From positions 153,414 through 217,413 of IMG/VR virus record IMGVR_UViG_3300023174_000046: a stretch of DNA of 64,000 bases; one strand, written 5' to 3'. The notes under the pieces were generated by a model that was not told the origin of the DNA, did not search any database, and saw nothing but the letters and a program-made list of their open reading frames with translations. This document shows positions 10,664-60,086 of this stretch, in pieces. The position numbers were made by a program, and so were the translations under genes. Each line of letters begins with the position of its first letter. Position 1 is the stretch's first letter.

Positions 10664-10671
10664 ATAATTAG

Positions 10672-14533: not shown

Positions 14534-14606
14534 TAATTGTATAGTTTCTTAAATGGTCTTTAATTTTAGACAAGTTATTCGTAAGGAATTTTAATAAATA
14601 TATACA

Positions 14607-17600
14607 ATGCCAACGTATAAGAAATTTACAGATTTTAGTCTTGTAACTGCACCTGCAGACGCAGATTTCATAGTGGGCTACAAGGCAGATGCATCTGCGG
14701 AGCAACGCACCACAGTGAATGATTTGCTCAGTACAAGTCTTGCCTCCAAAGGTGTATTTTTACAGGGTGACCTAAGTGTTGCAATTGGTGGTGATGGTAA
14801 CACGGTCAATTCACAATGCATGGCCATTGGTGACGCAAATGTTGCTCAGGGGCTCAATTCTTTGGCTCAGGGTTATTCCAATGTTACAGCTTTACTGTAC
14901 AGCACTGCTATGGGCTATAACAACAAAGCAACAGGTGATGTGGCATTTGCACAAGGTGATTCCAATCAGGCCACAGGTGAAGCCAGCTTTGCACAAGGCA
15001 CTCTCAACATTGCAGAAGGTACAGACAGTCAAGCACAAGGCTTCCGCAACATTGCTTCAGGTCCTTATTCACATGCACAAGGCTACAACAATTGCACTGG
15101 AGGCTATGTGACCGGTAACATTTCATATGGTGCTGCACATGCACAAGGTGGTTACAATGTGGTGGCCATTCCACTTGCACATGCACAAGGTTTTGCAAAC
15201 AAAATTGGTTATTATGAATATGCAGATTGGTATGCAACCAACCCACCTCGCCTGGGATTTGGTTACAGTGACCGAACTTTATCCGGTTTGAATGTGTATG
15301 GTTTGAACAATCCTGCATTGAGTTCTTCTGTGCGATTGTTTTTCATTGGTGACAATGGTATCAATACATATTCTGCCTGTGTTTCCTGCACACAGGCCAA
15401 TTACTATGATCCATTTAGTCAAACAACTGGATTTACAATTTTCTTAAAAAATGATGCATCTGCTGTATTGCCTGCAGACGACTACTATAGTCCTTCAATC
15501 ATATGTGTGCCTATCACAGCATATGATGGATCCACCAGTTTCAGTAACTTTGGTGTTGCAGCTTATGCACAAGGCCTTCAAAATGTTGTAGCTGGTAATT
15601 ACGCATATGCGCAAGGAATTAGCAATACAGCTCAAGGATATGCCAGCCATGCAGCAGGTTATGCCAGTAGCACAGGACCAAATGCAGTATATGCTTTTGC
15701 ACATGGTTACAATTGCATAGCTTATGGTCGTTATAGCCATGCCATAGGCATAAAAGCATATGCACAGCATGATAACAGTTATGTGTGGAATTCTGATCCA
15801 AATCCTACAGGAAATTATTTTACTTCATCTCTGAGTGCACAATACAGTGTGAATGCACCCGGTGGCATTGTGCTCAGTGGAGGCAACACATCAGTGCAAG
15901 GGTTGGTAGTTAAGAATGGAAATAATATAGTTGCAGAACTTACTGATGGGACCAAAAACTGGATCTATGGTGGTTTAAGCGCCAGCACATTGTTTGGTTA
16001 TGGCAACAGTGCAGGCTTTTTCTATAGAGGCATAGGTCTTGCCACTGGCAATGTAGCTGTTAGTATCAATGGTGTTGCAAATTATGCTAATAGTGGGATC
16101 ACAGATATTAATGGGGCATATAATTTTGTTTATAGTGATCTAGGCAGAGTTTCTGGTATTTCAAATGTGTTGGGTATGGAGAGTGGATCTGTGGAAGGAG
16201 CCCTCAACACAGTTGGTTCACCTTTTACCATATCAAGAATAGTTTCAGCTTCAAATACCATATTTGTTCATTCTACTTTCATAAACAACAATACCAATAG
16301 TTTTTATTTTAGACCTAATCAAGTCATACAGATAGATGGCATAGTGGGCAATACTTATAATAACTCAGCTGCCAGCAGAGTAAACACCCGCTTCACAGTT
16401 GTATCATCTGACACAACAGCCAGATCAATTACTGTTGTTGAATCTGTAACAGCAATGCAAGATTACCGAGACAATCAGCCATTTACCGATCAAAGATATG
16501 TTGTGGCAGTACAAGGCCGTAATACAAGCAATACTTTAAATGTAGCGGGTGCTCATGCTGAGGGTATGGGTAATACGGTTTTTAGTCGAGCAGGGCATGT
16601 TGAGGGAGAAGCTAATGTAGTTACCGGTTCAGATGGACATGCAGAAAATTTTGGTAATTTTGCTGCCACTGGTGCACATGCAGAAGGTAATGAGAACCGG
16701 GCCGGTTTTGGTGTTCTGTATTTTGATTCCTATAATGCCAGTACAAAGACTTTTCAGTTGTTTACAAACTTTCTCAGCGCACATAACACCATTGATCTTC
16801 CTCTCACACCAAACTCTACTCTGTATTTTATTAATGTAGCTGCTGGCGCTTCAAACAAAAGAAAATTTACTAGATTTTTGGTGCTTTCATCAGATCCAGC
16901 GCTCAACACAGTAACAGCTTTATCAGCTGTGTATCCTGATGACATACCTAGTTCAGGAGTTTCTACATTGACCCGTGCAAAACAATTGCTTCAATCACTC
17001 AATAGTTATACACATGCAGAAGGATCATTCAATAATGCAAAAGGTCCATCAAGCCATGCAGAAGGTGCATTTACTATAGCTCAAGGATCTTATTCACATG
17101 CTGCAGGTGTCAATGCAACTGCCAAGCAAGATTATACATATGCATGGAGTAGCAATGATGGTGCTGGTCCTCAAAGCAATCGTAAGAACACAGAAACAAC
17201 TCGCACTGGCCAATACATGGTGTCAGCACATGGCGGCATATTCTTCCCTGGCAAAGTGGGCATTGGCACTGATAGCATAGAAAATGCATTAACTGTAGCT
17301 GGTACCATATCTGCTACTACCATAACAGCAGATAGCATTTCATACAATGGTGCAGGGTTCAATACATTACCCACATACAAAACTTACCAAGTCAATTTAG
17401 CTGCTAAAAATTCTGCATGGCCTGTCATTTCAGCTGCACAGCTAGCTGAAACTGGTTACTATGATAGTGGTGCTGCATATGCCATGCCTGGCGGTCTTGT
17501 CATCAAAGGTCATTCACCTGCTTACAACACCAGCATTCAAAACTTACCTGGTTATGGCACATACGGCATGTGGCTTCAAGGTGTAGATCAAATGGATCCA

Positions 17601-19304
17601 GGTACCACTTTTGTGAGTGATGGGCGTGCTGCAGTAACTCATGCCATGACATTCCGAGCAGGTATCAATAACTTTACCGGGGGATCAGATCATAATCACG
17701 TGCAATGGCAAGGCGCCCCTTCCAATCCTACCCAAGCATGGCAAATGACCAATGGTGGATCAACAAGTGTTTATGGTTATGGTGCCAATACATATTCACA
17801 AAGATTTCTTGTACATACACTGCCACAATATCAAATCAGTACCACCATTGCAGCTGTTAGCGGTTTCCTTGACACTCAATCAGCTACCCTTGGTGCAGAT
17901 TCAGATACACTGTCAGGAGTTAAACTTATTCTTGATACTACTGCTGGAGTAGGCAATTATGGGTTAATTAATGTGGGAGAGGTGGTTGGGTTTGTAGTTA
18001 ATCCGGGATTGGTAGGCTTGGTTGCTGCAGCTTACGAAACACAATGCACATTAATTTCATCCAATAACACTGGTACATTATCGACATTTCAATTTAATTT
18101 CTTTATTGGTAACGGTGACAACTGGAGCTCTGCAAACAGAGGTATTCAACCAGTTAATTTAAAATCTAGAGCTGAAGGAGGCAATCCAGGCGTAAATCAA
18201 GTTACAAGTCAAATTGGTACCCCCAGCACACAGTACATAGGTCTCACCGGCAGTTACAGAGGCATGAACAAGCATTGCTTAGCCCGCTTCACTACAGGTG
18301 ATATTTTAACTGGCTTCAAGCCAGGCTCTCCTCTCACATTGTGGGTACCTAAGAGCATGCCATCATCTTCTCCAATTGGCTCTGGTTTCATCACATCTGA
18401 TAAAATTTCAACCTTTGCACAAGGCACATTCCCCACTGGTGTGCGCACAGGTTATTTTGATGCTTATGTAGTGAATGTGAGTGGTGGAGACATGGAATTT
18501 GCTTTGTGTAACTTGATGGATTCATATGGATTTGAAAACAGGTCTTGGCCCATATCTGCTGCTGGAAATGCGGGGTGGTTGTTGTACGGTGGCACACAAG
18601 ACACAGTGCATAGACCCACATTTGGTACTGCTGGTTTTTATTTTGAAAGAGAACCTTGGTACTTTTCTGGCCCGGATTATAACTACCTAAGCGGTGGCAT
18701 GGTCAAGTGTGTTGGCTTAGGTAACTCAGAGGTGTATGGTGATTACTCTTATGGCTTGGGTTACCGTGGTGCTGTGTTAGGTAAGAAGTCCGGTACATTT
18801 GCAGGTGATTACAATGCAGTATTTGGTGATAATTCAGTAGCCATCGGTGGCAGTAATTTAATCTCTACAAGTGGCAATCAGGTAGTCATTGGCACGTATA
18901 ACAACCCCAACACCAATTCATTGTTTGTAGTTGGCAGCGGCGCATCAGATAAAAATAGAAAGAATGTATTTGAAGTAAAAGGAAATGGAGACACTACACA
19001 GTCTGGATTTAATATTAGAAGTTTCTCTCTTATTGCTGCTGCTGGTAGCAATCAAGCAACTGCTACAGAAATAACAACAGAAATTGTTACTGTTACCGGA
19101 GGTACCGGTGGTGTTAGATTGCCTGTTACAAATGGAGGTCATTACATAACATTAAATAATAGAAACATAGCTTTCTCACTTTACCCTCCCGTAGGTGGTA
19201 TAATCATAGATCAGAGTATTGGTGTTAATCAACCATATGTTAGCCAGTGGTTCGGTAGCTTGATTATGTATTCGATTAGCGCTAATACCTGGGCACTTTA
19301 CTAA
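14607..19304 (+). CDS. Long tail fibre/adhesin with YadA-head-like repeats
   Basis: SHAQG/SHAEG repeats, GKVGIGT motif, LFVVGSG...RKNVFEV; late TAAATA at 14595. Confidence 0.8.
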   Translation: MPTYKKFTDFSLVTAPADADFIVGYKADASAEQRTTVNDLLSTSLASKGVFLQGDLSVAIGGDGNTVNSQCMAIGDANVAQGLNSLAQGYSNVTALLYSTAMGYNNKATGDVAFAQGDSNQATGEASFAQGTLNIAEGTDSQAQGFRNIASGPYSHAQGYNNCTGGYVTGNISYGAAHAQGGYNVVAIPLAHAQGFANKIGYYEYADWYATNPPRLGFGYSDRTLSGLNVYGLNNPALSSSVRLFFIGDNGINTYSACVSCTQANYYDPFSQTTGFTIFLKNDASAVLPADDYYSPSIICVPITAYDGSTSFSNFGVAAYAQGLQNVVAGNYAYAQGISNTAQGYASHAAGYASSTGPNAVYAFAHGYNCIAYGRYSHAIGIKAYAQHDNSYVWNSDPNPTGNYFTSSLSAQYSVNAPGGIVLSGGNTSVQGLVVKNGNNIVAELTDGTKNWIYGGLSASTLFGYGNSAGFFYRGIGLATGNVAVSINGVANYANSGITDINGAYNFVYSDLGRVSGISNVLGMESGSVEGALNTVGSPFTISRIVSASNTIFVHSTFINNNTNSFYFRPNQVIQIDGIVGNTYNNSAASRVNTRFTVVSSDTTARSITVVESVTAMQDYRDNQPFTDQRYVVAVQGRNTSNTLNVAGAHAEGMGNTVFSRAGHVEGEANVVTGSDGHAENFGNFAATGAHAEGNENRAGFGVLYFDSYNASTKTFQLFTNFLSAHNTIDLPLTPNSTLYFINVAAGASNKRKFTRFLVLSSDPALNTVTALSAVYPDDIPSSGVSTLTRAKQLLQSLNSYTHAEGSFNNAKGPSSHAEGAFTIAQGSYSHAAGVNATAKQDYTYAWSSNDGAGPQSNRKNTETTRTGQYMVSAHGGIFFPGKVGIGTDSIENALTVAGTISATTITADSISYNGAGFNTLPTYKTYQVNLAAKNSAWPVISAAQLAETGYYDSGAAYAMPGGLVIKGHSPAYNTSIQNLPGYGTYGMWLQGVDQMDPGTTFVSDGRAAVTHAMTFRAGINNFTGGSDHNHVQWQGAPSNPTQAWQMTNGGSTSVYGYGANTYSQRFLVHTLPQYQISTTIAAVSGFLDTQSATLGADSDTLSGVKLILDTTAGVGNYGLINVGEVVGFVVNPGLVGLVAAAYETQCTLISSNNTGTLSTFQFNFFIGNGDNWSSANRGIQPVNLKSRAEGGNPGVNQVTSQIGTPSTQYIGLTGSYRGMNKHCLARFTTGDILTGFKPGSPLTLWVPKSMPSSSPIGSGFITSDKISTFAQGTFPTGVRTGYFDAYVVNVSGGDMEFALCNLMDSYGFENRSWPISAAGNAGWLLYGGTQDTVHRPTFGTAGFYFEREPWYFSGPDYNYLSGGMVKCVGLGNSEVYGDYSYGLGYRGAVLGKKSGTFAGDYNAVFGDNSVAIGGSNLISTSGNQVVIGTYNNPNTNSLFVVGSGASDKNRKNVFEVKGNGDTTQSGFNIRSFSLIAAAGSNQATATEITTEIVTVTGGTGGVRLPVTNGGHYITLNNRNIAFSLYPPVGGIIIDQSIGVNQPYVSQWFGSLIMYSISANTWALY

Positions 19305-22430: not shown

Positions 22431-22522
22431 GCGCGGGTGGTGAAACGGCGAAACACATCTGGCTTAAGATCAGATACGGATTAATGATCACACTGTGGGT
22501 TCAAATCCCACCCCGCGTACCA
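22431..22522 (+). tRNA. tRNA-Leu(UAA)
   Basis: GCGCGGG/CCCGCGT acceptor, TCTGG-CTTAAGA-TCAGA anticodon arm, long variable arm, TTCAAAT T-loop, ACCA. Confidence 0.93.
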
Positions 22523-26151: not shown

Positions 26152-28584
26152 ATGAAAACAACAAACATAATAAAGAAGGCATTGAGCTTAATTGCCGCTG
26201 CTTTCATGACAACCGCAGCCAACAATGCCCAAGCAGTAGTGTTTCTATGGAACAACACTGGATCCAACTGGACATCCCCCACCAGCTGGACCAATGGCAT
26301 TCAACCTTCTGCAACCAGCTCCAGCACCACCACAGATGAAATACAGTTTGGTAATTATGGAGCCAACAATAACACTGTCATCTTGACATCCACCAGAGCT
26401 GCAAAAAATATCACATTCTTAGCCAATGCAAATCCATATTTGATCAACAGTTTCAATGGTGCTCAAACACTGTCATCTAGTGCAGGCATTACCAACAATT
26501 CTACTGCTACCCAAACATTCAACATATTGGTAGAGAATGCTAACAACAGTAACACCTGGTTTCAAACTGCAGGAGGAGCATTAGTATTCAATAATGTAGC
26601 TTCACTCACCACTGCATCTTCTAGCACATCCAGACTATTAACTCTGGCAGGAGATGGTGCATTCACATTCAACAATGAATTGAGGCAAGGTGGTTCAGCT
26701 ACAGCTGGCAGAGTCCTGTACACAGGCAATGGCACAGTCACATTCAATGGCACCAACACTCTGGGTGGAGGGTTTGAAATCAAAGGAGGAGGCACTGTGA
26801 ATGTGAATGGAGGCACTGGAGTCGGTCAAGGGTTGGTAACAATGGGAGCGGCAACTGGCACAACCAATACACCCAAATTGGTAATCAACACCACCAATGG
26901 CTTGTCTGTGGCCAACAGCTTCAAGGGTTCCAGCAGCTTAGCTACCATGGCCACATTGGATTTGCTAGCAGGCAATGATGCAAATGCAGTCACGACTTTT
27001 GTTGTGAATCAATATCAAGGCAACAACATGAGCTTCACCAACCATGGTGCAGGCAAAACACTGCTACAATTCACCAATGCTGCCAACATACTCACACTAT
27101 CCACAGACACCAGTGGTGGCAGGAGATTGATTAATAACAGCGCCAATTTAACTATACAGTTTGATGGCACCATGGACATTGGATCCACAACTGCAGATGT
27201 TAGTACTTTAGGTGGAGCAGGTGATCTTCTCTTCAAAGGATCTCTGTTCAACAACACAGCGTCAGTGCTCAGAGGATTGAACAAAACAGGCACTGGAACA
27301 GTCACTTTGCAAGCAGTCAATGCTTACAATGGAGACACTACCATTCAAGACGGTACACTGTTGGTGGACACTGCAGGTTCCATTGCTTCCAGTGCTGCTG
27401 TAGTATCAGGGGGTACTTTAAGAGTCAAAGGTACAGCTGGCAGTGCAGCACTTAATAGTGGAACCTTGCTAGTAGAAGGCACAGCTGGTGTAATAACACA
27501 AGGTGGGGGTACTTTTGATCTGAGAGGCACAGCTGGTGCCTTTACTATCTCCTCAGGAACTGCCACAGTGTATAGTGGTGGGTTTCTTGGCAACTCAACT
27601 CTCACTGGAGGCAGCTTGCTTAACAGTGGTACAGTAGGTGAAACAACCATTGCCACTGGCAGTACATTTGATGTGAAGACGGGCGGTACATCTTCCAAAG
27701 CTACTGTGAATGGTGGTACTTTGTTGGTATCAGGATCAGTGGCACAGACTGTTGTTAATTCTGGCACAGCCACAGTAAATTCTGGTGGTAATTCTGGCAT
27801 TACAACTGTGAATGGCAGTGCATTGAATGTGTATGGAAGAACTGGTGTATCCACAGTTAATACAGGTGGCACACTCAATGTAAAGACAGGTGGCAGTCTG
27901 TTGGGCACTAGCACTGTAGGTGGTGGCACATTGCTAGTGGATGGAACTGCTGGTACAGTAACAGTCAACTCTGGAACTGCTACAGTTAATACTGGAGGCA
28001 CAATTAACAGCACCACTGTGAATGGCGGTCTATTATCTGTGAATGGATCTGCAGGAGATGCATTGGTTAATACAGGAGGTACTTTGGGTGGTTCTGGTAG
28101 CGTGCAAGGCCTGACACTCAATGGTGGTATTGTGGCCCCAGGCAACAGCCCGGGTCTGCTCACTGCCTATGAGTTGAATGGAAGCAATGGAACATTCCAA
28201 TTCCAGTTGGGTGCACCTACTACCAGAGGGGTAACATATGATGCTATCAATGTGACAAGCTTGTTAACATTGGGTGCCAATACAGCATGGACATTTGAAA
28301 CCTTAGACAATTATGCATATGCTGATGGCAACACATATGACTTGTTTGATTGGGGTACAGCTGACATGAGCACATTTGATAGTGCAGTGCTGTTGGCTGC
28401 TCTGCCTGATCTTAACACTGCTAGTACAGATCTGAAATGGAATGTGAGCAACTTTACCATGGACGGTACAATTGGTGTTATTCCTGAACCTTCTACAGGT
28501 TCACTCATGGTGTTTGGTATTGCTAGCTTGATAACACTCAAAGCTATAAGGAGAAGAAAATGCCAACACCAAATACATTCCTAA
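26152..28584 (+). CDS. PEP-CTERM surface protein with autotransporter-associated beta-strand repeats
   Basis: Signal peptide; GLNKTGTGTVTL..N.Y.GDT.I..GTL; VAPGNSPG; C-terminal IPEPST-TM-RRRK. Confidence 0.92.
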   Translation: MKTTNIIKKALSLIAAAFMTTAANNAQAVVFLWNNTGSNWTSPTSWTNGIQPSATSSSTTTDEIQFGNYGANNNTVILTSTRAAKNITFLANANPYLINSFNGAQTLSSSAGITNNSTATQTFNILVENANNSNTWFQTAGGALVFNNVASLTTASSSTSRLLTLAGDGAFTFNNELRQGGSATAGRVLYTGNGTVTFNGTNTLGGGFEIKGGGTVNVNGGTGVGQGLVTMGAATGTTNTPKLVINTTNGLSVANSFKGSSSLATMATLDLLAGNDANAVTTFVVNQYQGNNMSFTNHGAGKTLLQFTNAANILTLSTDTSGGRRLINNSANLTIQFDGTMDIGSTTADVSTLGGAGDLLFKGSLFNNTASVLRGLNKTGTGTVTLQAVNAYNGDTTIQDGTLLVDTAGSIASSAAVVSGGTLRVKGTAGSAALNSGTLLVEGTAGVITQGGGTFDLRGTAGAFTISSGTATVYSGGFLGNSTLTGGSLLNSGTVGETTIATGSTFDVKTGGTSSKATVNGGTLLVSGSVAQTVVNSGTATVNSGGNSGITTVNGSALNVYGRTGVSTVNTGGTLNVKTGGSLLGTSTVGGGTLLVDGTAGTVTVNSGTATVNTGGTINSTTVNGGLLSVNGSAGDALVNTGGTLGGSGSVQGLTLNGGIVAPGNSPGLLTAYELNGSNGTFQFQLGAPTTRGVTYDAINVTSLLTLGANTAWTFETLDNYAYADGNTYDLFDWGTADMSTFDSAVLLAALPDLNTASTDLKWNVSNFTMDGTIGVIPEPSTGSLMVFGIASLITLKAIRRRKCQHQIHS

Positions 28585-37173: not shown

Positions 37174-37268
37174 GCCTCCGTCGTCTAGCGGTCAAGACAC
37201 ACGGCTTATACCCGTGCTCGGCACCAGATTAGTGCATAACGTTGGTTCGAATCCAACCGGAGGTACCA
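37174..37268 (+). tRNA. tRNA-Ile(UAU) with a 24-nt variable region
   Basis: GCCTCCG/CGGAGGT acceptor, CACGG-CTTATAC-CCGTG, GTTGG-TTCGAAT-CCAAC, ACCA. Confidence 0.85.
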
Positions 37269-37273
37269 TTTTT

Positions 37274-37349
37274 GGGCGTATAGCTCAGCGGTTAGAGCAG
37301 GGCACTCATAATGCCTTGGTCCTAGGTTCAAATCCTAGTACGCCCACCA
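37274..37349 (+). tRNA. tRNA-Ile2(CAU), lysidine type (Met less likely)
   Basis: GGGCA-CTCATAA-TGCCT-TGGTC resembles ileX-type tRNAs; CCA encoded. Confidence 0.82.
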
Positions 37350-37351
37350 TT

Positions 37352-37425
37352 GCATCTGTAGCTCAGTTGGACAGAGCAACGGATTTCTAATCCGTGGGTC
37401 ACAGGTTCGATCCCTGTCAGATGCA
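37352..37425 (+). tRNA. tRNA-Arg(UCU), CCA not encoded
   Basis: GCATCTG/CAGATGC acceptor, ACGGA-TTTCTAA-TCCGT. Confidence 0.92.
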
Positions 37426-37427
37426 AG

Positions 37428-38479: not shown

Positions 38480-38527
38480 CTTGCACTTGACATAATCTAA
38501 ATTTTCAATTATTATTAAATAATTGAT

Positions 38528-39415
38528 ATGGCGTTTGATAAAGACTTTAAACTGCTTCAAGAAGAATACAGCAACATGTATTCAAATGCTGAAAACGCAG
38601 AAGGTTTAGCTTCTACTGTTGGCATTCTTCCATGGAAAGAAGTGCCTGAAGAAGAAAAGAACAAAGCATATGAGCTAATAAAGGCTCATAATGATGCTGT
38701 GGTTAACCCCAAAGATGGTCCAGAAAATTATTACTTCATTGATGTAACTGGCAAGCATCAAGTTTATTATACATTTTGGAGATTCAGAATATTGCCAGCT
38801 GCAATACGCAATTGGATCAAGAATCCCATTTACTTTGGCAATTTATCCACAGACATTGTTGCATCTGTTCAAAAGGCTTTGTCAAAGAATATTGTAAAGA
38901 ATGTGCGGGTAGAATTGTATGGTGATGAAACTAGAGAACACTTGATAGGCAGAAGCAAGTCTACCCCTAAATTTACTTTTGGCAAATACAGAGGCAAATC
39001 GTTCCCTGATGTGTATCTAGAAGATCCAGGTTACTTTGCTTTCTTAGCCAAGAACGCTGATCCCAAGTATGCATCTACAGATAATGCTCAAGCCATTCAA
39101 GCTTTTGCGCAAATGTATTTTGATGATGTCACTAAAAAGAACCAGGAAACTTCTACTGCACAATTTGTGGGCAAACCAGGTGATCGCTTTGAAGGTGAAT
39201 TAGAACTTTATAATTTAAAAGAGGTTCCTGGTACCAGAGAGCAAGATGGTTATAATGTGTACAAATTGAAAGATGCTCAAGGCAATAAATATATTACATA
39301 TGCGTTTCCTGCTTCAGAAGTAGGTACTAAGATGAAAGTTAGAGCCAAGATTCAAGCACATAAAGAAATTTTAGGTGTCAAATTTAACAAGATTGGATAT
39401 GTAAAACCTGTATGA
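38528..39415 (+). CDS. Late protein with FGKYRG (DUF3820-like) motif and C-terminal OB-like domain
   Basis: FTFGKYRGKSF.DV...DPGYF; TAAATA at 38516. Confidence 0.65.
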   Translation: MAFDKDFKLLQEEYSNMYSNAENAEGLASTVGILPWKEVPEEEKNKAYELIKAHNDAVVNPKDGPENYYFIDVTGKHQVYYTFWRFRILPAAIRNWIKNPIYFGNLSTDIVASVQKALSKNIVKNVRVELYGDETREHLIGRSKSTPKFTFGKYRGKSFPDVYLEDPGYFAFLAKNADPKYASTDNAQAIQAFAQMYFDDVTKKNQETSTAQFVGKPGDRFEGELELYNLKEVPGTREQDGYNVYKLKDAQGNKYITYAFPASEVGTKMKVRAKIQAHKEILGVKFNKIGYVKPV

Positions 39416-39999
39416 AAAAGTTCAAAGAATTTTTTACAGAAGATTTTGATGATAATTCTGATGATTTAGATAGCAAATTAATAACAATGCATAAGCAGAT
39501 GCAAAAAAGAAGACAAATGTCCGGCAAGTCTTTACAGTCTGTAGATGCTGCTCCCTTAATGGCACCAGGATACTTTAAAGATTTTAATTTAAGTACAATT
39601 GCTAAGGGGCTGAGAAGATATTATAGAAGTATTATAGTTGATTATTATTCTAAAATTTTTAAAACTTTTAAAGATAAAATTGAACCTATATCCCAACAAG
39701 GAAAATGGGAGATGGACCCAGTTAAACAAGCTGAAAGCTTTAGAAGCTTAAGGTCTGCAGGCGGTCCAAAGTTTACCTTGTGTGGTTTTAATTTTGATAA
39801 AAGATATGGCTTTACTGATGAAGATAGACAAATGAATAATATCCTGGTCAATAGAATGTATGAAAAGATACATGACACCTTGCCCAAACTACTGGGCAAC
39901 AAAGCAAAAGCTATTGATATAAAGATTGACAACGACCCTTGGTATACAGGGCTTACATGTATAACAATAAATATATATTTGAACTATGAAAACGTTTAA
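39412..39999 (+). CDS. Putative internal head protein with T4-type capsid-targeting sequence
   Basis: MKKFKEFFTE resembles T4 CTS MKTYQEFIAE. Confidence 0.65.
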   Translation: MKKFKEFFTEDFDDNSDDLDSKLITMHKQMQKRRQMSGKSLQSVDAAPLMAPGYFKDFNLSTIAKGLRRYYRSIIVDYYSKIFKTFKDKIEPISQQGKWEMDPVKQAESFRSLRSAGGPKFTLCGFNFDKRYGFTDEDRQMNNILVNRMYEKIHDTLPKLLGNKAKAIDIKIDNDPWYTGLTCITINIYLNYENV

Positions 40000-40252
40000 A
40001 GAATTTTATTTAGAAGAAAAAGCTGGTGCAAGATGCACCAAGGTAACAGGTCAGCAATCATCTACACGGAAAGATAAGAAGTATATGCGCTGTGCACGTG
40101 TAAATGGTAAATTAAAAAGAGTGCATTACGGTGATCCTAATTTACGTATTAAGAAATCTAACCCCAAGAAAAGAAAGTCTTTCAGAGCTCGTCACAAGTG
40201 TTCTTCTGCCAAACCAGGAACAGCTAAGTATTTCAGCTGCAAAAATTGGTGA
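39986..40252 (+). CDS. Basic putative internal head protein (CTS leader)
   Basis: MKTFKEFYLEE; VHYGDPN...RKSFRARHKC...YFSC. Confidence 0.7.
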   Translation: MKTFKEFYLEEKAGARCTKVTGQQSSTRKDKKYMRCARVNGKLKRVHYGDPNLRIKKSNPKKRKSFRARHKCSSAKPGTAKYFSCKNW

Positions 40253-40614
40253 AAACGTTTAAAGAGTTTTTTATCGAATCAAAGCAAAAGCATTCTAAAC
40301 AAGAGGCGGGTTACGTGGCGCATACTGTTAAAGGTCAAAGATGTGATCAATGTACTATGTGGAGAGCTCCTAATAAATGCTCTGCAGTAGCAGGAGATAT
40401 CAAACCTGAAGCATGGTGCAAGTGGTGGAAGCAAAGCCACAGAAAAGATTTAAAAGAGAAGAGCATACATGATCCTGTAAGGCCTGGTATATTAAAGCGT
40501 CAGACCAAAGGCAAAATGACCTGCTCCAAAGCAAGAAGATTAAGGGCTAAGCAAAAGAATAAAGGTAACAATACAGCTAAAGCAGCTCAACGCTACTTAA
40601 ATTATCACTGTTAA
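40249..40614 (+). CDS. CTS-leader protein with HiPIP-like 4-Cys domain plus a basic module
   Basis: GTG start (M)KTFKEFFIE; CDQC...KC..V.G.I.PEAWC. Confidence 0.7.
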   Translation: MKTFKEFFIESKQKHSKQEAGYVAHTVKGQRCDQCTMWRAPNKCSAVAGDIKPEAWCKWWKQSHRKDLKEKSIHDPVRPGILKRQTKGKMTCSKARRLRAKQKNKGNNTAKAAQRYLNYHC

Positions 40615-41543
40615 GCCCACTGTGCTGTAAACGGCGTTGTGTAGTTTGTAAATGTGTTTGTAGCTGTCTTGTAAAGCTCAAAGCTATTAACTTGTATATA
40701 AGCCTGGTAACCATCATCCACATTGATGAATGTGCCATTAACCACAAACACATCTGCTGTGAGTGCTGGTGAGAACAGTGTCATACCAGCAGTTAGATTA
40801 GCTCTTGCTTGTGTGCTTGTAGCAGCACGAATAGATTCTGTTGCAAGCTTCATTCTTGTACCAATACCAGAAGTTGTTTGAAGCGAAGTTACATAATTAG
40901 CTGTTAAAGCTTTTCTTGTTGTTGTATCATCCCATAGAATTTTATTCAAGACATATTGCTGATAGTTGTTACCTGTACCGTAACCGGCGCCACCGGTACC
41001 AAAAGGAAATACATCACCACTTAATGGTGCAGTACTAGAAAGAGCATTGCTTGCTGTACCATAAACAGCAGGATTTACTAATCTATTCACAGCAACACCA
41101 ACAGCACCGCAAGTGTTTGAAAGTTCATTGCCTTGACCTCTTCTGAGCATGTAACCCAAATAGCCGCTCAAAGAGCATACACCAATATGAGGAGCAGAAA
41201 ATAACATTAATGCACCATTGGTAGCATATTGTATGTGTGAAGCCCATGCAAAGAGTGCAATTCTCCCAGTATGCGGGTAACCACCAATGCCACCTGCAAA
41301 AAATGGTCCTTGAAAATCATTCAAAGTAGCAGGCATTTGACCAATATTGTTATTGTAATAAGCTGGTGCATTTGCATCATCTGAACAAATTGAATCGGCT
41401 AATAAAACATTGTTGGCGCTATACCCACATAATGTTTGAATAAACGTTTTGCAATATCTGCCAAAATCTTCCACAAGAATGGCTCCAGGGTAGGCAGAAG
41501 CTGCTGTTACTATTGAGGTGTATGTTGATTGTGATATTGGCAT
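40611..41543 (-). CDS. LCIB-family (theta-type) carbonic anhydrase-like protein, copy 2
   Basis: ICSDD, GPFFAGGIGGYPHTG, APHIG, RRGQ, TCGA. Confidence 0.8.
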   Translation of the reverse strand: MPISQSTYTSIVTAASAYPGAILVEDFGRYCKTFIQTLCGYSANNVLLADSICSDDANAPAYYNNNIGQMPATLNDFQGPFFAGGIGGYPHTGRIALFAWASHIQYATNGALMLFSAPHIGVCSLSGYLGYMLRRGQGNELSNTCGAVGVAVNRLVNPAVYGTASNALSSTAPLSGDVFPFGTGGAGYGTGNNYQQYVLNKILWDDTTTRKALTANYVTSLQTTSGIGTRMKLATESIRAATSTQARANLTAGMTLFSPALTADVFVVNGTFINVDDGYQAYIQVNSFELYKTATNTFTNYTTPFTAQWA

Positions 41544-41551
41544 AAAAAATA

Positions 41552-42652
41552 TTAGTTGAGTTGTAATCCTGATTTAAATTGTGTAGTAAAGTCTTCGAAG
41601 GTATCTGTGGTCTTGTTGTATCTTAAGAAGTTTGTTACATCTGCATAAGCTTTAAATCCATCATCCACGTTAATAAATGTACCAGTGCTCAAGAACACAT
41701 CAACATTTCTGCCAGGGAACGCTGTTCTATAAGCAAGCTTGAATGTGCTGTTATTGTCAGGTTTAGCAATAATATTGAAAGCAGAGTTGCGAATTGCTTC
41801 TGTGGCCAATATCATTTGCTGCCCGAAGTCTGATGTTGCACAAATGGCTGTGCGTGCTGTTACATCATCATAAATTGCCTTGACAAGAGTATAGAATTGA
41901 AAATCCGATGCATTTGTTAACAATACATCAAGTGGATCAGGGCTAGGCCATTGAGGAGCAGGGCCGCTTACACCATTGTTTCTGATCCAATCAACAGCAG
42001 CTGCTGCAGCACCACAAGTTGCAGAAAGATTACCATAATTTTGACCGCGGCGTCTCATGTAACCTACTTGACCATCGCGAGTGATGCCAATGTGAGGGGC
42101 TATGTACAAGAATAGAGCACCTCCACTTGTGACGTGTGATGCATAAGCAAGGAGCCCTGTGGTACCAGTGTGTGGGTAACCATCTAAGCCGCCACCCATG
42201 AATGGTCCAAGGAAAGTTTGCAATGATTGAGGCATTTGACCGAGATTATTAATATTATTAAACACTGGTCCGTTCACATCATCAGAGCAAATAGATGATG
42301 AAAAGAGAACATTGCTTGGAGTGTAAGCAGCACTTACCGATTGAATATAAGTTTGTACGCGAAGACCAAAGTTTTCAGCTGTTGCAGCAGTTGGGTATGT
42401 CTTTCTTACCACATCACCATAATCAAGTTGTTGCGAAACTGGACCAGAATCAGATGTTAAACTGGAACCATGCATTAAGTTGTTATTCTCTAGTTCTGCA
42501 CGAGCTGCTTGTACTCTTTCTTCTATGATTTGTTGTTCAAATAAGAATTTCTTTTGAAAATCGGCTGATTGTGGCCTGCTAGGCACAACTACGGGGTTGC
42601 GAGGGCGACCATCATATTGCTTTAACCCATCTACATATTGCCTAGGAATCAT
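41552..42652 (-). CDS. LCIB-family (theta-type) carbonic anhydrase-like protein, copy 1, with N-terminal extension
   Basis: ICSDD, GPFMGGGLDGYPHTG, APHIG, RRGQ, TCGA; start MIPRQ 5 nt after TATAAATA. Confidence 0.82.
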   Translation of the reverse strand: MIPRQYVDGLKQYDGRPRNPVVVPSRPQSADFQKKFLFEQQIIEERVQAARAELENNNLMHGSSLTSDSGPVSQQLDYGDVVRKTYPTAATAENFGLRVQTYIQSVSAAYTPSNVLFSSSICSDDVNGPVFNNINNLGQMPQSLQTFLGPFMGGGLDGYPHTGTTGLLAYASHVTSGGALFLYIAPHIGITRDGQVGYMRRRGQNYGNLSATCGAAAAAVDWIRNNGVSGPAPQWPSPDPLDVLLTNASDFQFYTLVKAIYDDVTARTAICATSDFGQQMILATEAIRNSAFNIIAKPDNNSTFKLAYRTAFPGRNVDVFLSTGTFINVDDGFKAYADVTNFLRYNKTTDTFEDFTTQFKSGLQLN

Positions 42653-42657
42653 GTAAT

Positions 42658-42679
42658 TATTTATATTTAACAATAAATA
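42658..42679. promoter_or_regulatory. Back-to-back T4-type late promoters
   Basis: TATAAATA on minus (42658-42665) and TAAATA on plus (42674-42679), each 5-6 nt from an ATG. Confidence 0.75.
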
Positions 42680-42685
42680 ATATCA

Positions 42686-43435
42686 ATGAATAATAAAGAA
42701 AATCGTCTTATATTTGAAGCTTTTGCAACAAAGCTAATTAAAGAGGATATGCCTTATCCTACATTTGCCAAGCTTGCCAAGCATGCTTCGCCTAAATCGT
42801 CCAAGGAAAAAGATGAAAATGAATACAAAGATCAAATGCCTGATAGCAAAGAAGAATATTCAGCTCATGATTATGCCAAAGAAATGGAAGCCAAGCCCGG
42901 TGAACAAGAAGAACAACCACAAACACATGCGGACATGTCTCATGATCAAAAAGAAGCTGCAATGCTTCTCAAGAAGTTTGGTTACACTTTCTTTGACATG
43001 GACATGCACGGTCGTGATTACGTTGCTTATTTTGTGAACGAAAAGCTCCCTCACAATCATGCAAAGCATGGCATCAAAGTGAAGCATGATGGCATCATAG
43101 TTGGTCCTGCAGATTCCCCTTTCATTGGCAAGAAAGTAAAAGAATTAATTCCTTCAGAAGATGCAGAAGAGCAAGCAGAAGCAGTAGCAGTTTCTGGCCA
43201 ATACAAATACATCTATTTTCTAGATGCTGAAGAATGTTATTCCATTAACCCTTATCAAATTGTGCCGTTCAAGAAAGCAGTAAGAGAGACAAGCAATTGG
43301 ACCAAAGCGCGTGTAATGGTTGGTGAAGATATTGTTCAAATTCTTGGCAAGAGTGTTAAAGATCAAAGAGCTTGGTACATTGTAGGTGCAGAAGCTCCCA
43401 ACGATCATGTATTTGAAGTTTTGTTAGGTAGCTAA
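42686..43435 (+). CDS. Putative internal head protein (LIFE leader)
   Basis: MNNKENRLIFEAF; acidic EDAEEQAE linker. Confidence 0.65.
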   Translation: MNNKENRLIFEAFATKLIKEDMPYPTFAKLAKHASPKSSKEKDENEYKDQMPDSKEEYSAHDYAKEMEAKPGEQEEQPQTHADMSHDQKEAAMLLKKFGYTFFDMDMHGRDYVAYFVNEKLPHNHAKHGIKVKHDGIIVGPADSPFIGKKVKELIPSEDAEEQAEAVAVSGQYKYIYFLDAEECYSINPYQIVPFKKAVRETSNWTKARVMVGEDIVQILGKSVKDQRAWYIVGAEAPNDHVFEVLLGS

Positions 43436-43436
43436 T

Positions 43437-43985
43437 ATGGATAGAGAATCAAAGCTTATTTTCGAAGCATATGCATTGAAAGGTTTAGCTGCAGGTAAAA
43501 CACTTGCTGATATAGCCAAGAAGCATGGTGTTAGTATAGAAGTGATGCAAACAGCTCTGCAGAGAGGCATGAAAGTTGAACACGAGCACACAGGTAATGA
43601 AGCTGCTGCAAAAAAGATTGCAATGGATCATTTGTTTGAAGATCCAGAATATTATGCAAAACTTGCCAAGATAGAGGGTGAAGAGAGTGAGCAAAATGAA
43701 GAGCGCAGATTGGATCCTAAATGCTGGAAAGGCTATCATAAATCTGGTACCAAGCTCAAAGATGGTGTGCGTGTCAACAATTGTGTTAAATCACAAAATA
43801 ATGAAGAAAAGCTTGTAGGTGGTCAGAAGAAACTGGATGCCAATCATGATGGTAAGATCTCTGGCGCAGATTTTAAAATTCTCAAGAAGCATAAAGGTGA
43901 AGAACAAGAAGAAATGCAATGCCCATATGCAGCAAAAGGCTGTAAATGTAGTGAATGTGAAGAATGTGCTGCCAATCAGGCTTAA
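43437..43985 (+). CDS. Modular putative internal protein (LIFE leader; DUF5661-like, CWKGY, EF-hand-like and Cys modules)
   Basis: EHEHT...IAMDHL.EDP.YY.KL; CWKGY...NCV; LDANHDGKISGADF. Confidence 0.7.
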   Translation: MDRESKLIFEAYALKGLAAGKTLADIAKKHGVSIEVMQTALQRGMKVEHEHTGNEAAAKKIAMDHLFEDPEYYAKLAKIEGEESEQNEERRLDPKCWKGYHKSGTKLKDGVRVNNCVKSQNNEEKLVGGQKKLDANHDGKISGADFKILKKHKGEEQEEMQCPYAAKGCKCSECEECAANQA

Positions 43986-57705: not shown

Positions 57706-57713
57706 AACAGTAT

Positions 57714-60086
57714 TTATCCTGGTAAATTCTTAACAACAGTTATATTAGTACCACCTGCTATGCTTTGACCTGCACCAGCAGTCCAGGTGGCATCGCTGGC
57801 TCGAGCATATATTGTACGGCCATTGAGAGTACTTAATGAACCTGCTTCATACACAGTCAATGGAGCAAAGGAACTGATGGTGAGCAAGCTTGTGCAGTTG
57901 TATAAAAACAATCCTCCAATAGATGCAATGCCATTGGGTATGAGTATATTGGTTAAAGACGGGTTTTGTGCAAATGCATAACTGCAAAGGATTGCAGTGC
58001 TAGTGTTTGCTATGTTCACAGCAGTTAATGAGTTTAAATTGAATGCAAATCGACCAACTATGGACACGCTGCCGGGTATGCTCACAGACTTTAACGCATT
58101 GCTTGCAAATGCACCATCACCAATGTATGTTACATTGCTGGGTATATTCACTGCAGACAAATTGTTGCCTTGAAATGCATTGGTACCTATGCTTGTCATA
58201 TTGTTAGGTATAGTTACAGCAGACAATTGATTGTATAAGAATGCACCTATACCTATGCTTGTCATATTGTTAGGTATGTCTACAGCAGACAATTTGTTTT
58301 GTGCAAATGCATAGTCAGGTACAAAATTTATACCAGTCCCCAGTGTAAGGATGGATATATTGTTGCTTTGAAATGCACCTCCACCCATGCTGGTGACAGT
58401 GTCAGGTATGCTCACAGCAGACAATTTGTTGCCGTAGAATGCAAATAAATTAATATTTGTCACGCTGTTGGGTATGGTCACAGCAGACAAATTGTTTAGG
58501 CTAAATGCATAATTTCCTATGGTTGCAACGCTACTGCCCAATGTCAAGAAGGATATGGTGTTGCTTTGAAATGCATAATTGCCAATGGCTGTCACACTGT
58601 TGGGTATGTTCACAGCAGATAATTTCTGGTTATTGAATGTACTTGAGCCAATATATTGCACACTGTTGCCCAGTGTCAAGGAGGATATGTTGTTGCTTTG
58701 AAATGCAGTAGAATCAATATATGTAACTGAGTCTGGTATGTTAACTACAGTTAATTTGTTGTTACCAAATGCATACTCTCCTATGTATGTGACACCATTG
58801 GGTATGGTTGCAGCAGACAAATTGTTGTTGGCAAATGATTGATATGCAATGTTGGTCACACCATTGGGTATGACAATGTCATTCAATCGATTGTCCTTGA
58901 ATGCCTGGTATGATGTGAAGGACAGACCAGTTGGCAGTGTTACAGCAGACAATGCATTGGCAGCAAAAGACAAAGATGCACCAGCTGCACCTTGCTTGGG
59001 CAAACTAACTGCACTCAACTTGTTGTTGGTGCAATACAAGTTTGATATATTCCTACTGCTAGCCACATCCAGGTATGTTAATGCATTGTAATTGCAATTC
59101 ATTTCTTTTAATGCAGAAAGGCTTGACACATCCAGAGATGACAGACTGTTGTAATTCACATAAAGATATTGTATGTTGTTGCATCCTGAAAAATATATGG
59201 AAGAAAGAAGCAATCCTCCTGTTCCAGAGCTGTAATAGCCTTCATAATTATTAACAAAAACACTGATTAGCTTAGGAAGATTGGTGAAAGTAAAAGATGT
59301 GAATTGATTATTTTGCATATAAATAACTTCTAAATCCGTGCATCCAAAAAGATTCACAGATGATAGCCGATTGGATGCAATATTAACAGAGTTTATTTTG
59401 TTGTTGTTGGAAAGATTCAGTGTGGTAAGTTTACCGCCGGGCGCCTGTAAAGATGTTAAGTTCGGAACATTAGTCAGATTGATGGCGGTTAAATTATTGT
59501 TGATACAGTAGAGAGAATGAAGACTGCTGAGACCAGATGCTTGAACAGAAGATAGAACATATTGAAAACCGGCATCATGTTGATAGCTACAATCCAGTAA
59601 CTCTAGTGCAGGCATCTGAGCAGACAGATTGTTCAAAGATGTAAACCAATTAGAATTGCAGTTCAACTGCTTCAGCTTGTGCAAGCCAATGACAGGCAAA
59701 CTTGTAAGTTTATTGCTATTGCAATCTAGTATTTCAACATTTTGCAAATCAAACCCCGTGGTAGGGTCAATTGAATCCCACCCACCCAGCATAGTGGCTA
59801 TTTGCAAATGCTTTACCACTGGTGACAGTATCAGGTCTTCCTGTTCTATGTTATTGTATGACACGTTTAGTTTTGTTGCCAAGGGAAACTGTGTGGCATC
59901 AAAATAATCAAACAAATTGCTGCTCACATCCAGAGTCACAATATTATTTTTACCTGTGATTGCTTGCATCCAGCTGTTCAGCTGACATTCAGCCATGGTC
60001 AAATCCAACTGAGAACAACGGGATGCATCCACACCCTGCATGGGTATTCCTGCAACGTATAACCGGTTAATTTTACCTGTTTTCAT
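57714..60086 (-). CDS. Leucine-rich repeat protein (internalin-type LRR + BspA/LRR_5)
   Basis: L.C..N.L..L repeats then IP.SVT.IG..AF..N.L repeats; in frame with the upstream ORF across one TGA. Confidence 0.88.
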   Translation of the reverse strand: MKTGKINRLYVAGIPMQGVDASRCSQLDLTMAECQLNSWMQAITGKNNIVTLDVSSNLFDYFDATQFPLATKLNVSYNNIEQEDLILSPVVKHLQIATMLGGWDSIDPTTGFDLQNVEILDCNSNKLTSLPVIGLHKLKQLNCNSNWFTSLNNLSAQMPALELLDCSYQHDAGFQYVLSSVQASGLSSLHSLYCINNNLTAINLTNVPNLTSLQAPGGKLTTLNLSNNNKINSVNIASNRLSSVNLFGCTDLEVIYMQNNQFTSFTFTNLPKLISVFVNNYEGYYSSGTGGLLLSSIYFSGCNNIQYLYVNYNSLSSLDVSSLSALKEMNCNYNALTYLDVASSRNISNLYCTNNKLSAVSLPKQGAAGASLSFAANALSAVTLPTGLSFTSYQAFKDNRLNDIVIPNGVTNIAYQSFANNNLSAATIPNGVTYIGEYAFGNNKLTVVNIPDSVTYIDSTAFQSNNISSLTLGNSVQYIGSSTFNNQKLSAVNIPNSVTAIGNYAFQSNTISFLTLGSSVATIGNYAFSLNNLSAVTIPNSVTNINLFAFYGNKLSAVSIPDTVTSMGGGAFQSNNISILTLGTGINFVPDYAFAQNKLSAVDIPNNMTSIGIGAFLYNQLSAVTIPNNMTSIGTNAFQGNNLSAVNIPSNVTYIGDGAFASNALKSVSIPGSVSIVGRFAFNLNSLTAVNIANTSTAILCSYAFAQNPSLTNILIPNGIASIGGLFLYNCTSLLTISSFAPLTVYEAGSLSTLNGRTIYARASDATWTAGAGQSIAGGTNITVVKNLPG

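What the first reader, a model, noticed from the sequence alone, without database searches (positions are those of the whole stretch)
39412..40614. Three tandem genes with T4-like capsid-targeting leaders, one carrying a HiPIP-like Fe-S domain
Seen: MKKFKEFFTE, MKTFKEFYLE and (M)KTFKEFFIE. Established: T4 internal proteins use the 10-aa CTS MKTYQEFIAE, removed after Glu by the prohead protease, and HiPIPs bind [4Fe-4S] through CxxC...C...WC but are normally Tat-exported. Here the 4-Cys domain has a CTS instead of a Tat signal and is followed by LKE and a second basic module. Inference: a redox/Fe-S protein packaged in the head and injected with the DNA.
Basis: partly seen in the sequence, partly recalled or inferred. 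Interest (0 to 1): 0.62.

Follow-up and report, generated by a model that had tools for sequence, protein, structure and literature searches.

The report
Capsid-tagged phage proteins, one HiPIP-like
Three neighbouring genes of a large T4-like water phage start with a close copy of the ten-residue tag that phage T4 uses to load proteins into its head, and one carries a small iron-sulfur (HiPIP) domain, so this phage probably packs and injects an iron-sulfur protein, though packaging is untested.

Summary
Three overlapping + strand genes (39412-39999, 39986-40252, 40249-40614) begin MKKFKEFFTE, MKTFKEFYLE and (GTG)KTFKEFFIE. This motif occurs nowhere else in the 217-kb genome and was absent from ORF starts in 60 random genomes.

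The genome is a T4-like myovirus with gp20, gp21 protease, gp22 and gp23.

Gene 3 residues 11-66 form a PioC-type HiPIP domain. A family profile hits PioC at E=3e-17, and the top 17 Foldseek hits to the AlphaFold model are all HiPIPs. The four Cys, the Tyr and the aromatic shield are conserved. Bacterial homologues carry Tat signals exactly where the phage protein carries the leader.

Comparative data favour a T4-type capsid-targeting propeptide:
- The cargo domains are nearly invariant, while their leaders are hypervariable.
- The leaders end in (L/I/V)-x-Glu at the cargo boundary (116 of 117 and 46 of 46 proteins), which is the gp21 cleavage motif.
- Homologues in non-T4 phages lack a leader.
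- MKTFKEF starts at least 103 mostly basic proteins on viral contigs, and long contigs nearly always carry gp23.
- In other phages the HiPIP domain is fused to portal-MuF and prohead-protease proteins.

Packaging, cleavage and iron binding remain unmeasured. A sigma-70-like promoter upstream argues for early expression. I rate this a new variant of a known kind.

The parts
38487..38515 (+). Best sigma-70-like promoter match (TTGACA-17-TATTAT, 11/12) in the 48-bp gap before the first gene of the unit
   Evidence: This is a consensus match only; function is not shown.
38528..39415 (+). Upstream gene of the same overlapping unit (295 aa, ExoX-like_C motif, phrog_3628). It has no leader and is context only.
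39412..39999 (+). Gene 1 (P0004, 195 aa). Leader MKKFKEFFTE at 39412-39441. The cargo is 185 aa, pI 9.05, with no known family. Only three homologues were found, all with the same leader; one is fused to the C-module of gene 3.
39966..39973 (+). AATAAATA, the phage's late-gene motif, 12 nt before the ATG of gene 2 (the usual spacing is 5-6 nt)
39986..40252 (+). Gene 2 (P0005, 88 aa). Leader MKTFKEFYLE(E) at 39986-40018. The cargo is a 77-aa, pI 11, four-Cys basic core (weak DUF5754, phrog_7595) that is 75-97% conserved in over 300 relatives.
40249..40278 (+). Leader of gene 3, (GTG)M-KTFKEFFIE. The predicted gp21 cut is after Glu10.
   Evidence: (pLDDT about 50, not part of the fold)
40279..40446 (+). 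HiPIP (PioC-like) domain of gene 3, residues 11-66. Cys ligands are at 40342-40344, 40351-40353, 40378-40380 and 40417-40419. Tyr22 and Trp38/56/59/60 form the aromatic shield.
40450..40458 (+). Leu-Lys-Glu junction (residues 68-70), a candidate internal gp21 site. It matches the boundary that follows the leader in proteins made of leader plus C-module only.
40459..40614 (+). C-module of gene 3 (residues 71-121, pI 11.2, helical, plus stop codon). This mobile ~50-aa module is 80-94% conserved in 198 proteins. It is found alone after a leader or behind DUF5661, cREC_REC, HiPIP, the gene-1 cargo or the gene-2 core.

Best explanation
The three genes encode internal head proteins of the T4 IPI/IPII/IPIII kind.

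Proposed mechanism (all steps inferred):
- Each protein is made with a ~10-residue N-terminal capsid-targeting propeptide (Phe4, Phe7, Glu10) that carries it into the gp22 scaffolding core of the prohead.
- The gp21-type prohead protease (Peptidase_S77) then cuts after the Glu. In gene 3 it probably also cuts at Leu-Lys-Glu70.
- The small basic mature products stay with the DNA in the head and leave with it at infection. They are about 21.6 kDa, 8.9 kDa, and 12.8 kDa or 7.0 + 5.9 kDa.

Shown by computation:
- The cargo of gene 3 is a PioC-type HiPIP domain, a fold that holds a [4Fe-4S] cluster on four Cys.
- In the phage protein the propeptide stands where the bacterial Tat export signal stands.

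Further inference: HiPIPs acquire their cluster in the cytoplasm before export, so the phage protein can be loaded by host Fe-S machinery. At about 7 kDa it is small enough to pass the tail folded, as proposed for T4 IPI*.

The role of the cluster after injection is open. My preferred guess is a compact, redox-responsive effector or DNA-associated protein that acts against a host defence. A purely structural use of the cluster is the fallback.
For: (1) T4-type head machinery is present: Portal_T4, Peptidase_S77 at 1e-32, Gp23 at 3e-94 with gp22 and gp21 adjacent.

(2) The leaders keep the T4 CTS residues shown by mutagenesis to matter. Positions 4 and 7 are needed for targeting and position 10 for cutting (PMC9026906; CTS sequence). 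As in T4 ipIII-ipII, the tagged genes sit in tandem.

(3) In the gene-2 family the core is 75-97% identical while the leaders are hypervariable. 116/117 leaders end in Glu at the boundary, with L/V/I/F/M two residues before it in 110/116. In the C-module family 46/46 end in Glu and 39/46 have the hydrophobic residue. This is the gp21 motif L/I-x-E.

(4) The same cores in non-T4 phages have no leader: podophages CRP-235 and elemo, and siphophage Kolga. In the T4-like HTVC008M and Melnitz they carry extensions.

These fall into about 64 cargo clusters with median cargo pI 10.1; Glu is at position 10 in 52/103. 9 of 10 host records of 60 kb or more carry Gp23. The commonest cargo occurs in T4-like cyanophages.

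(6) The HiPIP domain recurs inside head proteins of other phages: portal+MuF fusions, XkdF/ClpP-type prohead proteases, and ParB- or zeta-toxin-bearing giant proteins.

(7) HiPIP identity is supported.

(8) Mature sizes and pI match T4 IPII and IPIII.

(9) A late-gene motif lies 12 nt before gene 2.
Against: - There is no virion proteome, no N-terminal sequence and no metal analysis for any member.
- The strongest promoter match before the unit is sigma-70-like, which points to early expression. The late motif before gene 2 has atypical spacing.
- Position 8 (P3) is Phe in genes 1 and 3, not Leu/Ile. Gene 2 is canonical only if it is cut after Glu11.
- In cyanophage P-SSM2 two tandem leader-bearing genes (PSSM2_114 and _115) are annotated as hypothetical, while the adjacent PSSM2_116 is annotated as a virion structural protein. 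They may therefore have gone undetected in virions, although Lys/Arg-rich proteins are hard to see by tryptic MS.
- Leaders on different cargo in one genome are not always of the same type (3 of 9 contigs).
- A structure prediction of gp21 with the leader gave no answer.
Confidence: 0.55

Rival explanations
1. These are small cytoplasmic early proteins that are never packaged. On this view the shared N-terminus is a short amphipathic helix used for something else, such as binding a common host or phage partner or giving efficient translation starts. The unit would be transcribed by host RNA polymerase early in infection.
For: An 11/12 sigma-70-like promoter sits directly upstream of the four-gene unit. 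The genes lie among non-structural genes (tRNAs, sugar epimerase, carbonic-anhydrase-like genes). The P-SSM2 counterparts are not annotated as structural. AAA/AT-rich second to seventh codons are common in well-translated genes (general knowledge).
Against: This view does not explain why the leader ends in the gp21 motif exactly at the edge of the conserved cargo in 116/117 and 46/46 proteins. It does not explain why non-T4 phages lack the leader, or why the tag is tied to gp23-bearing genomes. It also leaves unexplained why the HiPIP domain is fused to portal and prohead-protease proteins elsewhere. The leader is disordered in the model and is not part of the fold. A late motif does lie before gene 2.
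Confidence: 0.28
2. The four-Cys domain keeps the HiPIP fold but in the phage binds Zn, or nothing, as a structural knuckle. It would then not be a redox protein. This rival concerns only the cargo and is compatible with packaging.
For: Small four-Cys domains often bind Zn. The protein itself scores below the Pfam HiPIP cut-off (18 versus 22 bits). A few family members have lost the fourth Cys or replace the Trp before it with His. A cluster may not survive passage through the tail.
Against: The non-ligand residues that shield the cluster in HiPIPs are kept across 59 phage and bacterial members: Tyr22 59/59, an aromatic at position 38 59/59, Trp56 56/59, an aromatic at position 60 56/59. The Cys spacing is identical to PioC, a proven [4Fe-4S] HiPIP (PMC7462912). 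The model superposes on PioC at 1.8 A.
Confidence: 0.2
3. The three leaders are alike only because of recent tandem duplication or cassette recombination at a shared 5' end, with no function of their own.
For: The 30-nt leaders are 24-25/30 identical in DNA. T4 internal-protein loci are known recombination hot spots (general knowledge; PMC3012670).
Against: The three cargos are unrelated. The same heptapeptide heads about 64 unrelated cargo clusters on other contigs. Orthologous cargos keep the pattern (Phe, hydrophobic pair, Glu) while the sequence drifts. Recombination at the tag is also what is expected of a functional CTS and does not exclude function.
Confidence: 0.05

Closest known systems
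[quoted passage not shown]
   Same: A ten-residue N-terminal tag is 5-6/10 identical to MKTYQEFIAE, including positions 1-3, 6, 7 and 10, with Tyr to Phe at position 4. The tagged genes are in tandem. The mature products are small and basic (pI 9-11, 7-22 kDa). The genome encodes gp20, gp21, gp22 and gp23.
   Different: The cargos are unrelated to the T4 IPs. Position 8 is Phe or Tyr. The cargos are built from shuffled mini-modules rich in Cys. The host and phage lineage are distant: the portal is only about 35% identical to cyanophage portals. Nothing has been shown experimentally.
PioC of Rhodopseudomonas palustris TIE-1 and other short HiPIPs (PDB 6xyv, 1isu, 3h31)
   Same: Cys spacing is the same (C-x2-C-x8-C-x12-C). 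The Tyr and Trp shield is conserved, the domain length is about 50 residues, and the predicted fold matches.
   Different: There is no Tat signal and no periplasmic electron-transfer partners in the genome context. The domain is fused to a basic C-terminal module and encoded by a virus.
Propeptide-bearing ejection and inner-body proteins of giant phages phiKZ, 201phi2-1 and SPN3US
   Same: These are head proteins targeted by N-terminal propeptides and cut after Glu by a gp21-related protease. Paralogues share identical N-termini (PMC5694885).
   Different: Their propeptides are mostly over 100 residues with an S/A-x-E motif, the proteins are large, and the phage lineage is different.
Polyvalent proteins and MuF (SPP1 gp7-like) head-associated fusion proteins
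   Same: The HiPIP-like domain occurs in portal+MuF, ParB, zeta-toxin and prohead-protease fusions. This fits the idea of packaged, injected multi-domain effectors (PMC5512222).
   Different: Here the modules are small separate or two-module proteins carrying a T4-type tag, not giant fusions. That paper does not mention a HiPIP domain.

Membership tests
HiPIP (Pfam PF01355) | Four Cys ligands in the pattern C-x2-C-x(8-16)-C-x(12-15)-C | tested here: met
   Cys32, 35, 44 and 57 have the same spacing as PioC. They are invariant or 58/59 across the family alignment.
HiPIP (Pfam PF01355) | Score above the curated Pfam cut-off (22 bits) | tested here: not met
   P0006 scores 18 bits, E=0.0037. Its homologues P0144, P0168, P0139, P0231, P0137 and P0204 score 22.7-36.8 bits.
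HiPIP (Pfam PF01355) | Sequence homology to a HiPIP of solved structure | tested here: met
   The family profile hits PioC (6xyv) at E=3.3e-17 and other HiPIPs at 1e-6 to 1e-4. The single sequence hits PioC at E=2.2e-5 with a gapless alignment.
HiPIP (Pfam PF01355) | HiPIP fold | tested here: met
   In the AlphaFold2 model pLDDT is 85-94 over residues 11-60. The top 17 Foldseek PDB hits are all HiPIPs; PioC gives TM 0.79 and rmsd 1.8 A. This is a prediction, not a solved structure.
HiPIP (Pfam PF01355) | Conserved Tyr and aromatic residues that bury the cluster | tested here: met
   Tyr22 59/59, aromatic at position 38 59/59, Trp56 56/59, aromatic at position 60 56/59.
HiPIP (Pfam PF01355) | Binds a [4Fe-4S] cluster with high redox potential | not testable with these tools
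   This needs UV-vis, EPR and electrochemistry on purified protein.
HiPIP (Pfam PF01355) | Tat signal peptide and periplasmic location | tested here: not met
   P0006 and other phage members have no RR motif or hydrophobic stretch. Bacterial homologues (P0204, P0217, P0184, P0190, P0226) do.
T4-type CTS-bearing internal head proteins | N-terminal ~10-residue propeptide resembling MKTYQEFIAE, with the targeting residues 4 and 7 and Glu at 10 | tested here: met
   All three leaders have Phe4, Phe7 and Glu10 and are 5-6/10 identical to the T4 CTS.
T4-type CTS-bearing internal head proteins | gp21 cleavage motif Leu/Ile-x-Glu at the end of the propeptide | tested here: inconclusive
   Gene 2 has Leu-Glu-Glu11. 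Genes 1 and 3 have Phe-x-Glu10. Family-wide, P3 is L/V/I/F/M in 110/116 and I/L/F/V in 39/46 proteins.
T4-type CTS-bearing internal head proteins | Genome encodes the gp21 prohead protease, a scaffold and a T4-type capsid | tested here: met
T4-type CTS-bearing internal head proteins | Basic mature protein | tested here: met
   pI 9.05, 10.99 and 10.26, against 9.56 and 9.65 for T4 IPII and IPIII.
T4-type CTS-bearing internal head proteins | Late expression together with head genes | tested here: inconclusive
   A late motif lies 12 nt before gene 2, but a sigma-70-like promoter lies before the unit.
T4-type CTS-bearing internal head proteins | Present in virions in processed form and ejected with the DNA | not testable with these tools
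   No proteome of a carrier was found.

The most novel reading that the evidence does not exclude
A large, mostly uncultured clade of marine and freshwater T4-like phages uses a sequence-readable N-terminal tag (MKxFxEF-hydrophobic-x-Glu and its variants) to load dozens of families of small basic modules into the capsid. If so, the set of injected proteins can be read directly from genomes. One recurrent cargo is a true [4Fe-4S] HiPIP carried in many copies per virion. It would be the first redox metalloprotein known to be delivered by a phage head, and a capsid-borne iron pool that bears on how much iron aquatic viruses hold.
Probability: 0.35. Interest if true: 0.82.

Novelty: new variant of a known kind. 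Interest (0 to 1): 0.68.

Why it matters
T4's capsid-targeting sequence has been treated as a feature of T-even coliphages. Here the same tag, with the same critical residues and the same protease motif, appears across uncultured aquatic T4-like phages on many unrelated small basic cargos.

If it works as in T4, three things follow:
- It gives a simple sequence rule for predicting which phage proteins are injected with the DNA. That class includes anti-restriction and other counter-defence factors.
- It points to an unexpected cargo, an iron-sulfur electron-carrier fold that bacteria normally export to the periplasm.
- It raises testable questions: what a redox cluster does inside a capsid or in the first seconds of infection, and how much iron virions carry.

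UniProt already labels the S-SRM01 homologue automatically as containing a HiPIP profile domain. I found no paper that discusses a phage HiPIP or a CTS outside the coliphage and giant-phage models.

Tried and rejected
- **gp21 with the leader:** Complex prediction of gp21 (P0400) with P0006 residues 1-40 gave no verdict (score 0.00, controls not run). It counts neither for nor against binding.
- **Fold of the gene-2 core:** the model (m4b604474e5cb, pLDDT 74) has no PDB match with E below 1.
- **Gene 1 cargo:** no Pfam or PHROG hit, only three homologues, and an Atlas hit of 0.78, which is chance level.
- **Close relatives:** megablast of the locus against 50,697 GenBank phages gave no match.
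- **Cultured carriers of the HiPIP domain:** tblastn with three different HiPIP-domain queries found only Synechococcus phage S-SRM01.
- **T4 late promoter:** TATAAATA is not enriched in the window (5 matches against 7 expected). The informative signal turned out to be ATAAATA placed 5-6 nt before start codons.
- **One leader type per genome:** this idea is only partly borne out. In 3 of 9 contigs the leaders on the C-module and on the gene-2 core are close in sequence; in 3 both are N-terminal but of different type (3300020578_000006, 3300021376_000030, 3300043436_005236); in the other 3 the leader-like stretch is internal or followed by another domain. Genes next to orthologues on other contigs carry no leaders.
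- **Literature:** searches for HiPIP with phage capsid, DUF5661, high-potential iron-sulfur protein with cyanophage, and CTS with cyanophage or pelagiphage found nothing relevant. The polyvalent-protein paper, the S-SRM01 paper and the cyanomyovirus comparison do not mention the domain or the tag.
Full report
**What is there**

The window is the last 64 kb of a 217,413-bp viral record rated complete. It is a T4-like myovirus. It has a T4-type portal in the window (8888-10663). Elsewhere in the genome it has a Peptidase_S77 prohead protease (gp21), a scaffold-like gp22 and a gp23 capsid gene side by side. Its portal is only about 35% identical to those of cyanophages, and no GenBank phage is close in DNA.

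At 39412-40614 three + strand genes overlap one another, and the first overlaps an upstream ORF (38528-39415). They start MKKFKEFFTE, MKTFKEFYLE and, from GTG 40249, KTFKEFFIE. A loose version of the motif occurs only at these three start codons in all six frames of the genome. Sixty random genomes gave none on a start codon.

**The iron-sulfur domain**

- Gene 3 scores 18 bits on Pfam HiPIP, under the 22-bit cut-off.
- An exhaustive search with residues 1-72 found 479 relatives. Several phage members with similar leaders pass the cut-off.
- A profile of 71 family members hits the solved HiPIP PioC at E=3.3e-17 and four other HiPIPs at weaker E-values.
- The single sequence aligns to PioC without gaps at E=2.2e-5, with all four Cys matched.
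- The AlphaFold2 model is confident over residues 11-60. Its 17 best PDB matches are all HiPIPs, with PioC at TM 0.79 and rmsd 1.8 A.
- The Tyr and the aromatic residues that bury the cluster in HiPIPs are kept in 56-59 of 59 members.

I therefore accept the HiPIP fold and think a [4Fe-4S] cluster likely. Metal binding itself is unmeasured.

Bacterial members of the family carry Tat signals. The phage leader stands in the same place, and the cut predicted after Glu10 falls where mature PioC begins. UniProt already labels the S-SRM01 homologue as containing a HiPIP profile domain.

**Is the leader a capsid-targeting sequence?**

What is established for T4:
- IPII and IPIII both start MKTYQEFIAE.
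- The tag is removed after Glu by gp21, whose motif is L/I-x-E.
- Mutagenesis places targeting at residues 4 and 7 and processing at residues 8 and 10 (PMC9026906; PMC8442874).

The three leaders here keep Phe at 4 (Tyr in T4), Phe at 7 and Glu at 10. Position 8 is Phe or Tyr instead of Ile. Gene 2 is canonical if it is cut after Glu11.

Comparative evidence:
- *Gene-2 family.* More than 300 relatives keep the core at 75-97% identity, while the N-terminal 7-32 residues vary freely. Even so, 116 of 117 leaders end in Glu at the edge of the core, with L/V/I/F/M two residues earlier in 110 of those 116.
- *C-module family.* All 46 short-leader members end in Glu.
- *Other phage types.* The same core has no leader in two podophage groups and a siphophage. 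It carries N-terminal extensions in the T4-like HTVC008M and Melnitz.
Of 124 matches, 103 look like true ORF starts. Their cargos fall into about 64 crude clusters with median pI 10.1, and Glu is at position 10 in 52 of the 103.
- *Link to T4-type capsids.* Of ten host records of 60 kb or more, nine carry gp23, including both complete ones. The commonest cargo occurs in T4-like cyanophages, where P-TIM68 has MKTYKEFI and P-SSM2 has two tandem tagged genes next to a virion structural gene.
- *The HiPIP domain elsewhere.* In other phages it is fused to portal+MuF proteins, XkdF or ClpP-type prohead proteases, and ParB- or zeta-toxin-bearing giants. These are all head-associated contexts.

**Modular build**

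Gene 3 is two modules joined at Leu-Lys-Glu70. The C-terminal 51 residues (pI 11.2) form a mobile module that is 80-94% conserved in 198 proteins. It occurs alone behind a leader, or behind DUF5661, cREC_REC, the HiPIP domain, the gene-1 cargo or the gene-2 core.

A Glu precedes the module in 115 of 120 proteins, including 73 of the 75 where the module is internal. The junction may therefore be a second protease site that frees the two halves.

Mature sizes and pI resemble those of T4 IPII and IPIII.

**Points against**

- The best promoter match before the unit is sigma-70-like, which suggests early transcription.
- The phage's late signal appears to be ATAAATA 5-6 nt before start codons: 54 of its 85 occurrences precede an ORF start, including gp21 and tail genes. 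One copy lies before gene 2, but at 12 nt.
- The P-SSM2 counterparts are not annotated as structural.
- Leaders on different cargos within one genome can differ.
- The complex prediction gave no verdict.
- No proteomic or biochemical data exist for any member.

**Verdict**

The sequence observation is confirmed and the HiPIP assignment is well supported. The capsid-targeting reading is the best explanation (about 0.55), but packaging has not been shown. The main rival is a non-packaged early protein (about 0.28). Whether the domain holds Fe-S or Zn is a separate open point.

This is a new variant of a known kind: T4-style tagged internal proteins, in a distant aquatic lineage, built from shuffled mini-modules and carrying a HiPIP cargo.

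Noticed in passing
window 40611-41543 (-) and 41552-42673 (-): Two tandem ORFs (310 and 373 aa) match the LCIB/LCIC carbonic-anhydrase-like family known from algal CO2-concentrating mechanisms (PF18599, E=4e-20 and 7e-31). This is an unusual gene for a phage and a possible clue to a phototrophic host. The second has a late motif before an internal ATG at 42652.
   Followed up: partly
whole genome; e.g. window 10660-10671, 14594-14606, 42673-42685, 57706-57717: ATAAATA sits 4-13 nt (mostly 5-6 nt) before the start codon of an ORF in 54 of its 85 occurrences, including gp21, tail genes and large structural ORFs. It looks like a T4-type late promoter placed so close to the ATG that late mRNAs would be almost leaderless.
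   Followed up: partly
genome 73302 (-), 95847 (-), 99092 (-), 79374 (-); window 42686-43435: Several late-motif genes start with other amphipathic leader-like N-termini (MKMFDVLFAKLMED, MTMKSFSDRFISLFE, MNNKSIFDKLYEDVM, MNNK..LIFEA), followed by Gly-rich or acidic stretches. They may be further propeptide-bearing head or core proteins.
   Followed up: no
genome 73302 (-) versus gp23 at genome 44355-45851 (-): An 86-aa late-motif protein shares the stretch GGSLGTFQTS(D/N)W..NP with the N-terminal region of the major capsid protein. This suggests a partial duplication of the capsid N-terminus.
   Followed up: no
window 37174-37426 and 22431-22522: A tRNA cluster comprises Ile(tat, 95 nt, unusually long), Met and Arg(tct). 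A separate 92-nt tRNA-Leu(taa) lies elsewhere in the window.
   Followed up: no
window 43437-43985: This ORF has a DUF5661 domain plus an EF-hand/dockerin-like Ca-binding motif. DUF5661 is one of the modules most often found between a leader and the C-module in related phages.
   Followed up: partly
window 1892-3310, 12920-14533, 14607-19304, 26152-28584, 57714-60086: Uncommon phage genes: a tryptophan halogenase, an RCC1-repeat protein, a 1565-aa ORF with a late motif, a PATR-repeat protein and a BspA-type leucine-rich-repeat protein.
   Followed up: no
L015 (IMGVR_UViG_3300011113_000747) and L100: In some relatives the leader-like peptide is internal. It joins a cREC_REC domain or a long unknown protein to the C-module or to the gene-2 core, as if genes had fused or polyproteins were cut at these junctions.
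   Followed up: partly
phage records BK067786.1 (Nitrosopumilaceae spindle-shaped virus) and OQ401624.1: The C-terminal half of the gene-2 core (RKSFRARHKC...W) also occurs in an archaeal spindle-shaped virus and is annotated as an HVA1 family protein in Roseobacter phage CRP-902. The module crosses very distant virus groups.
   Followed up: no
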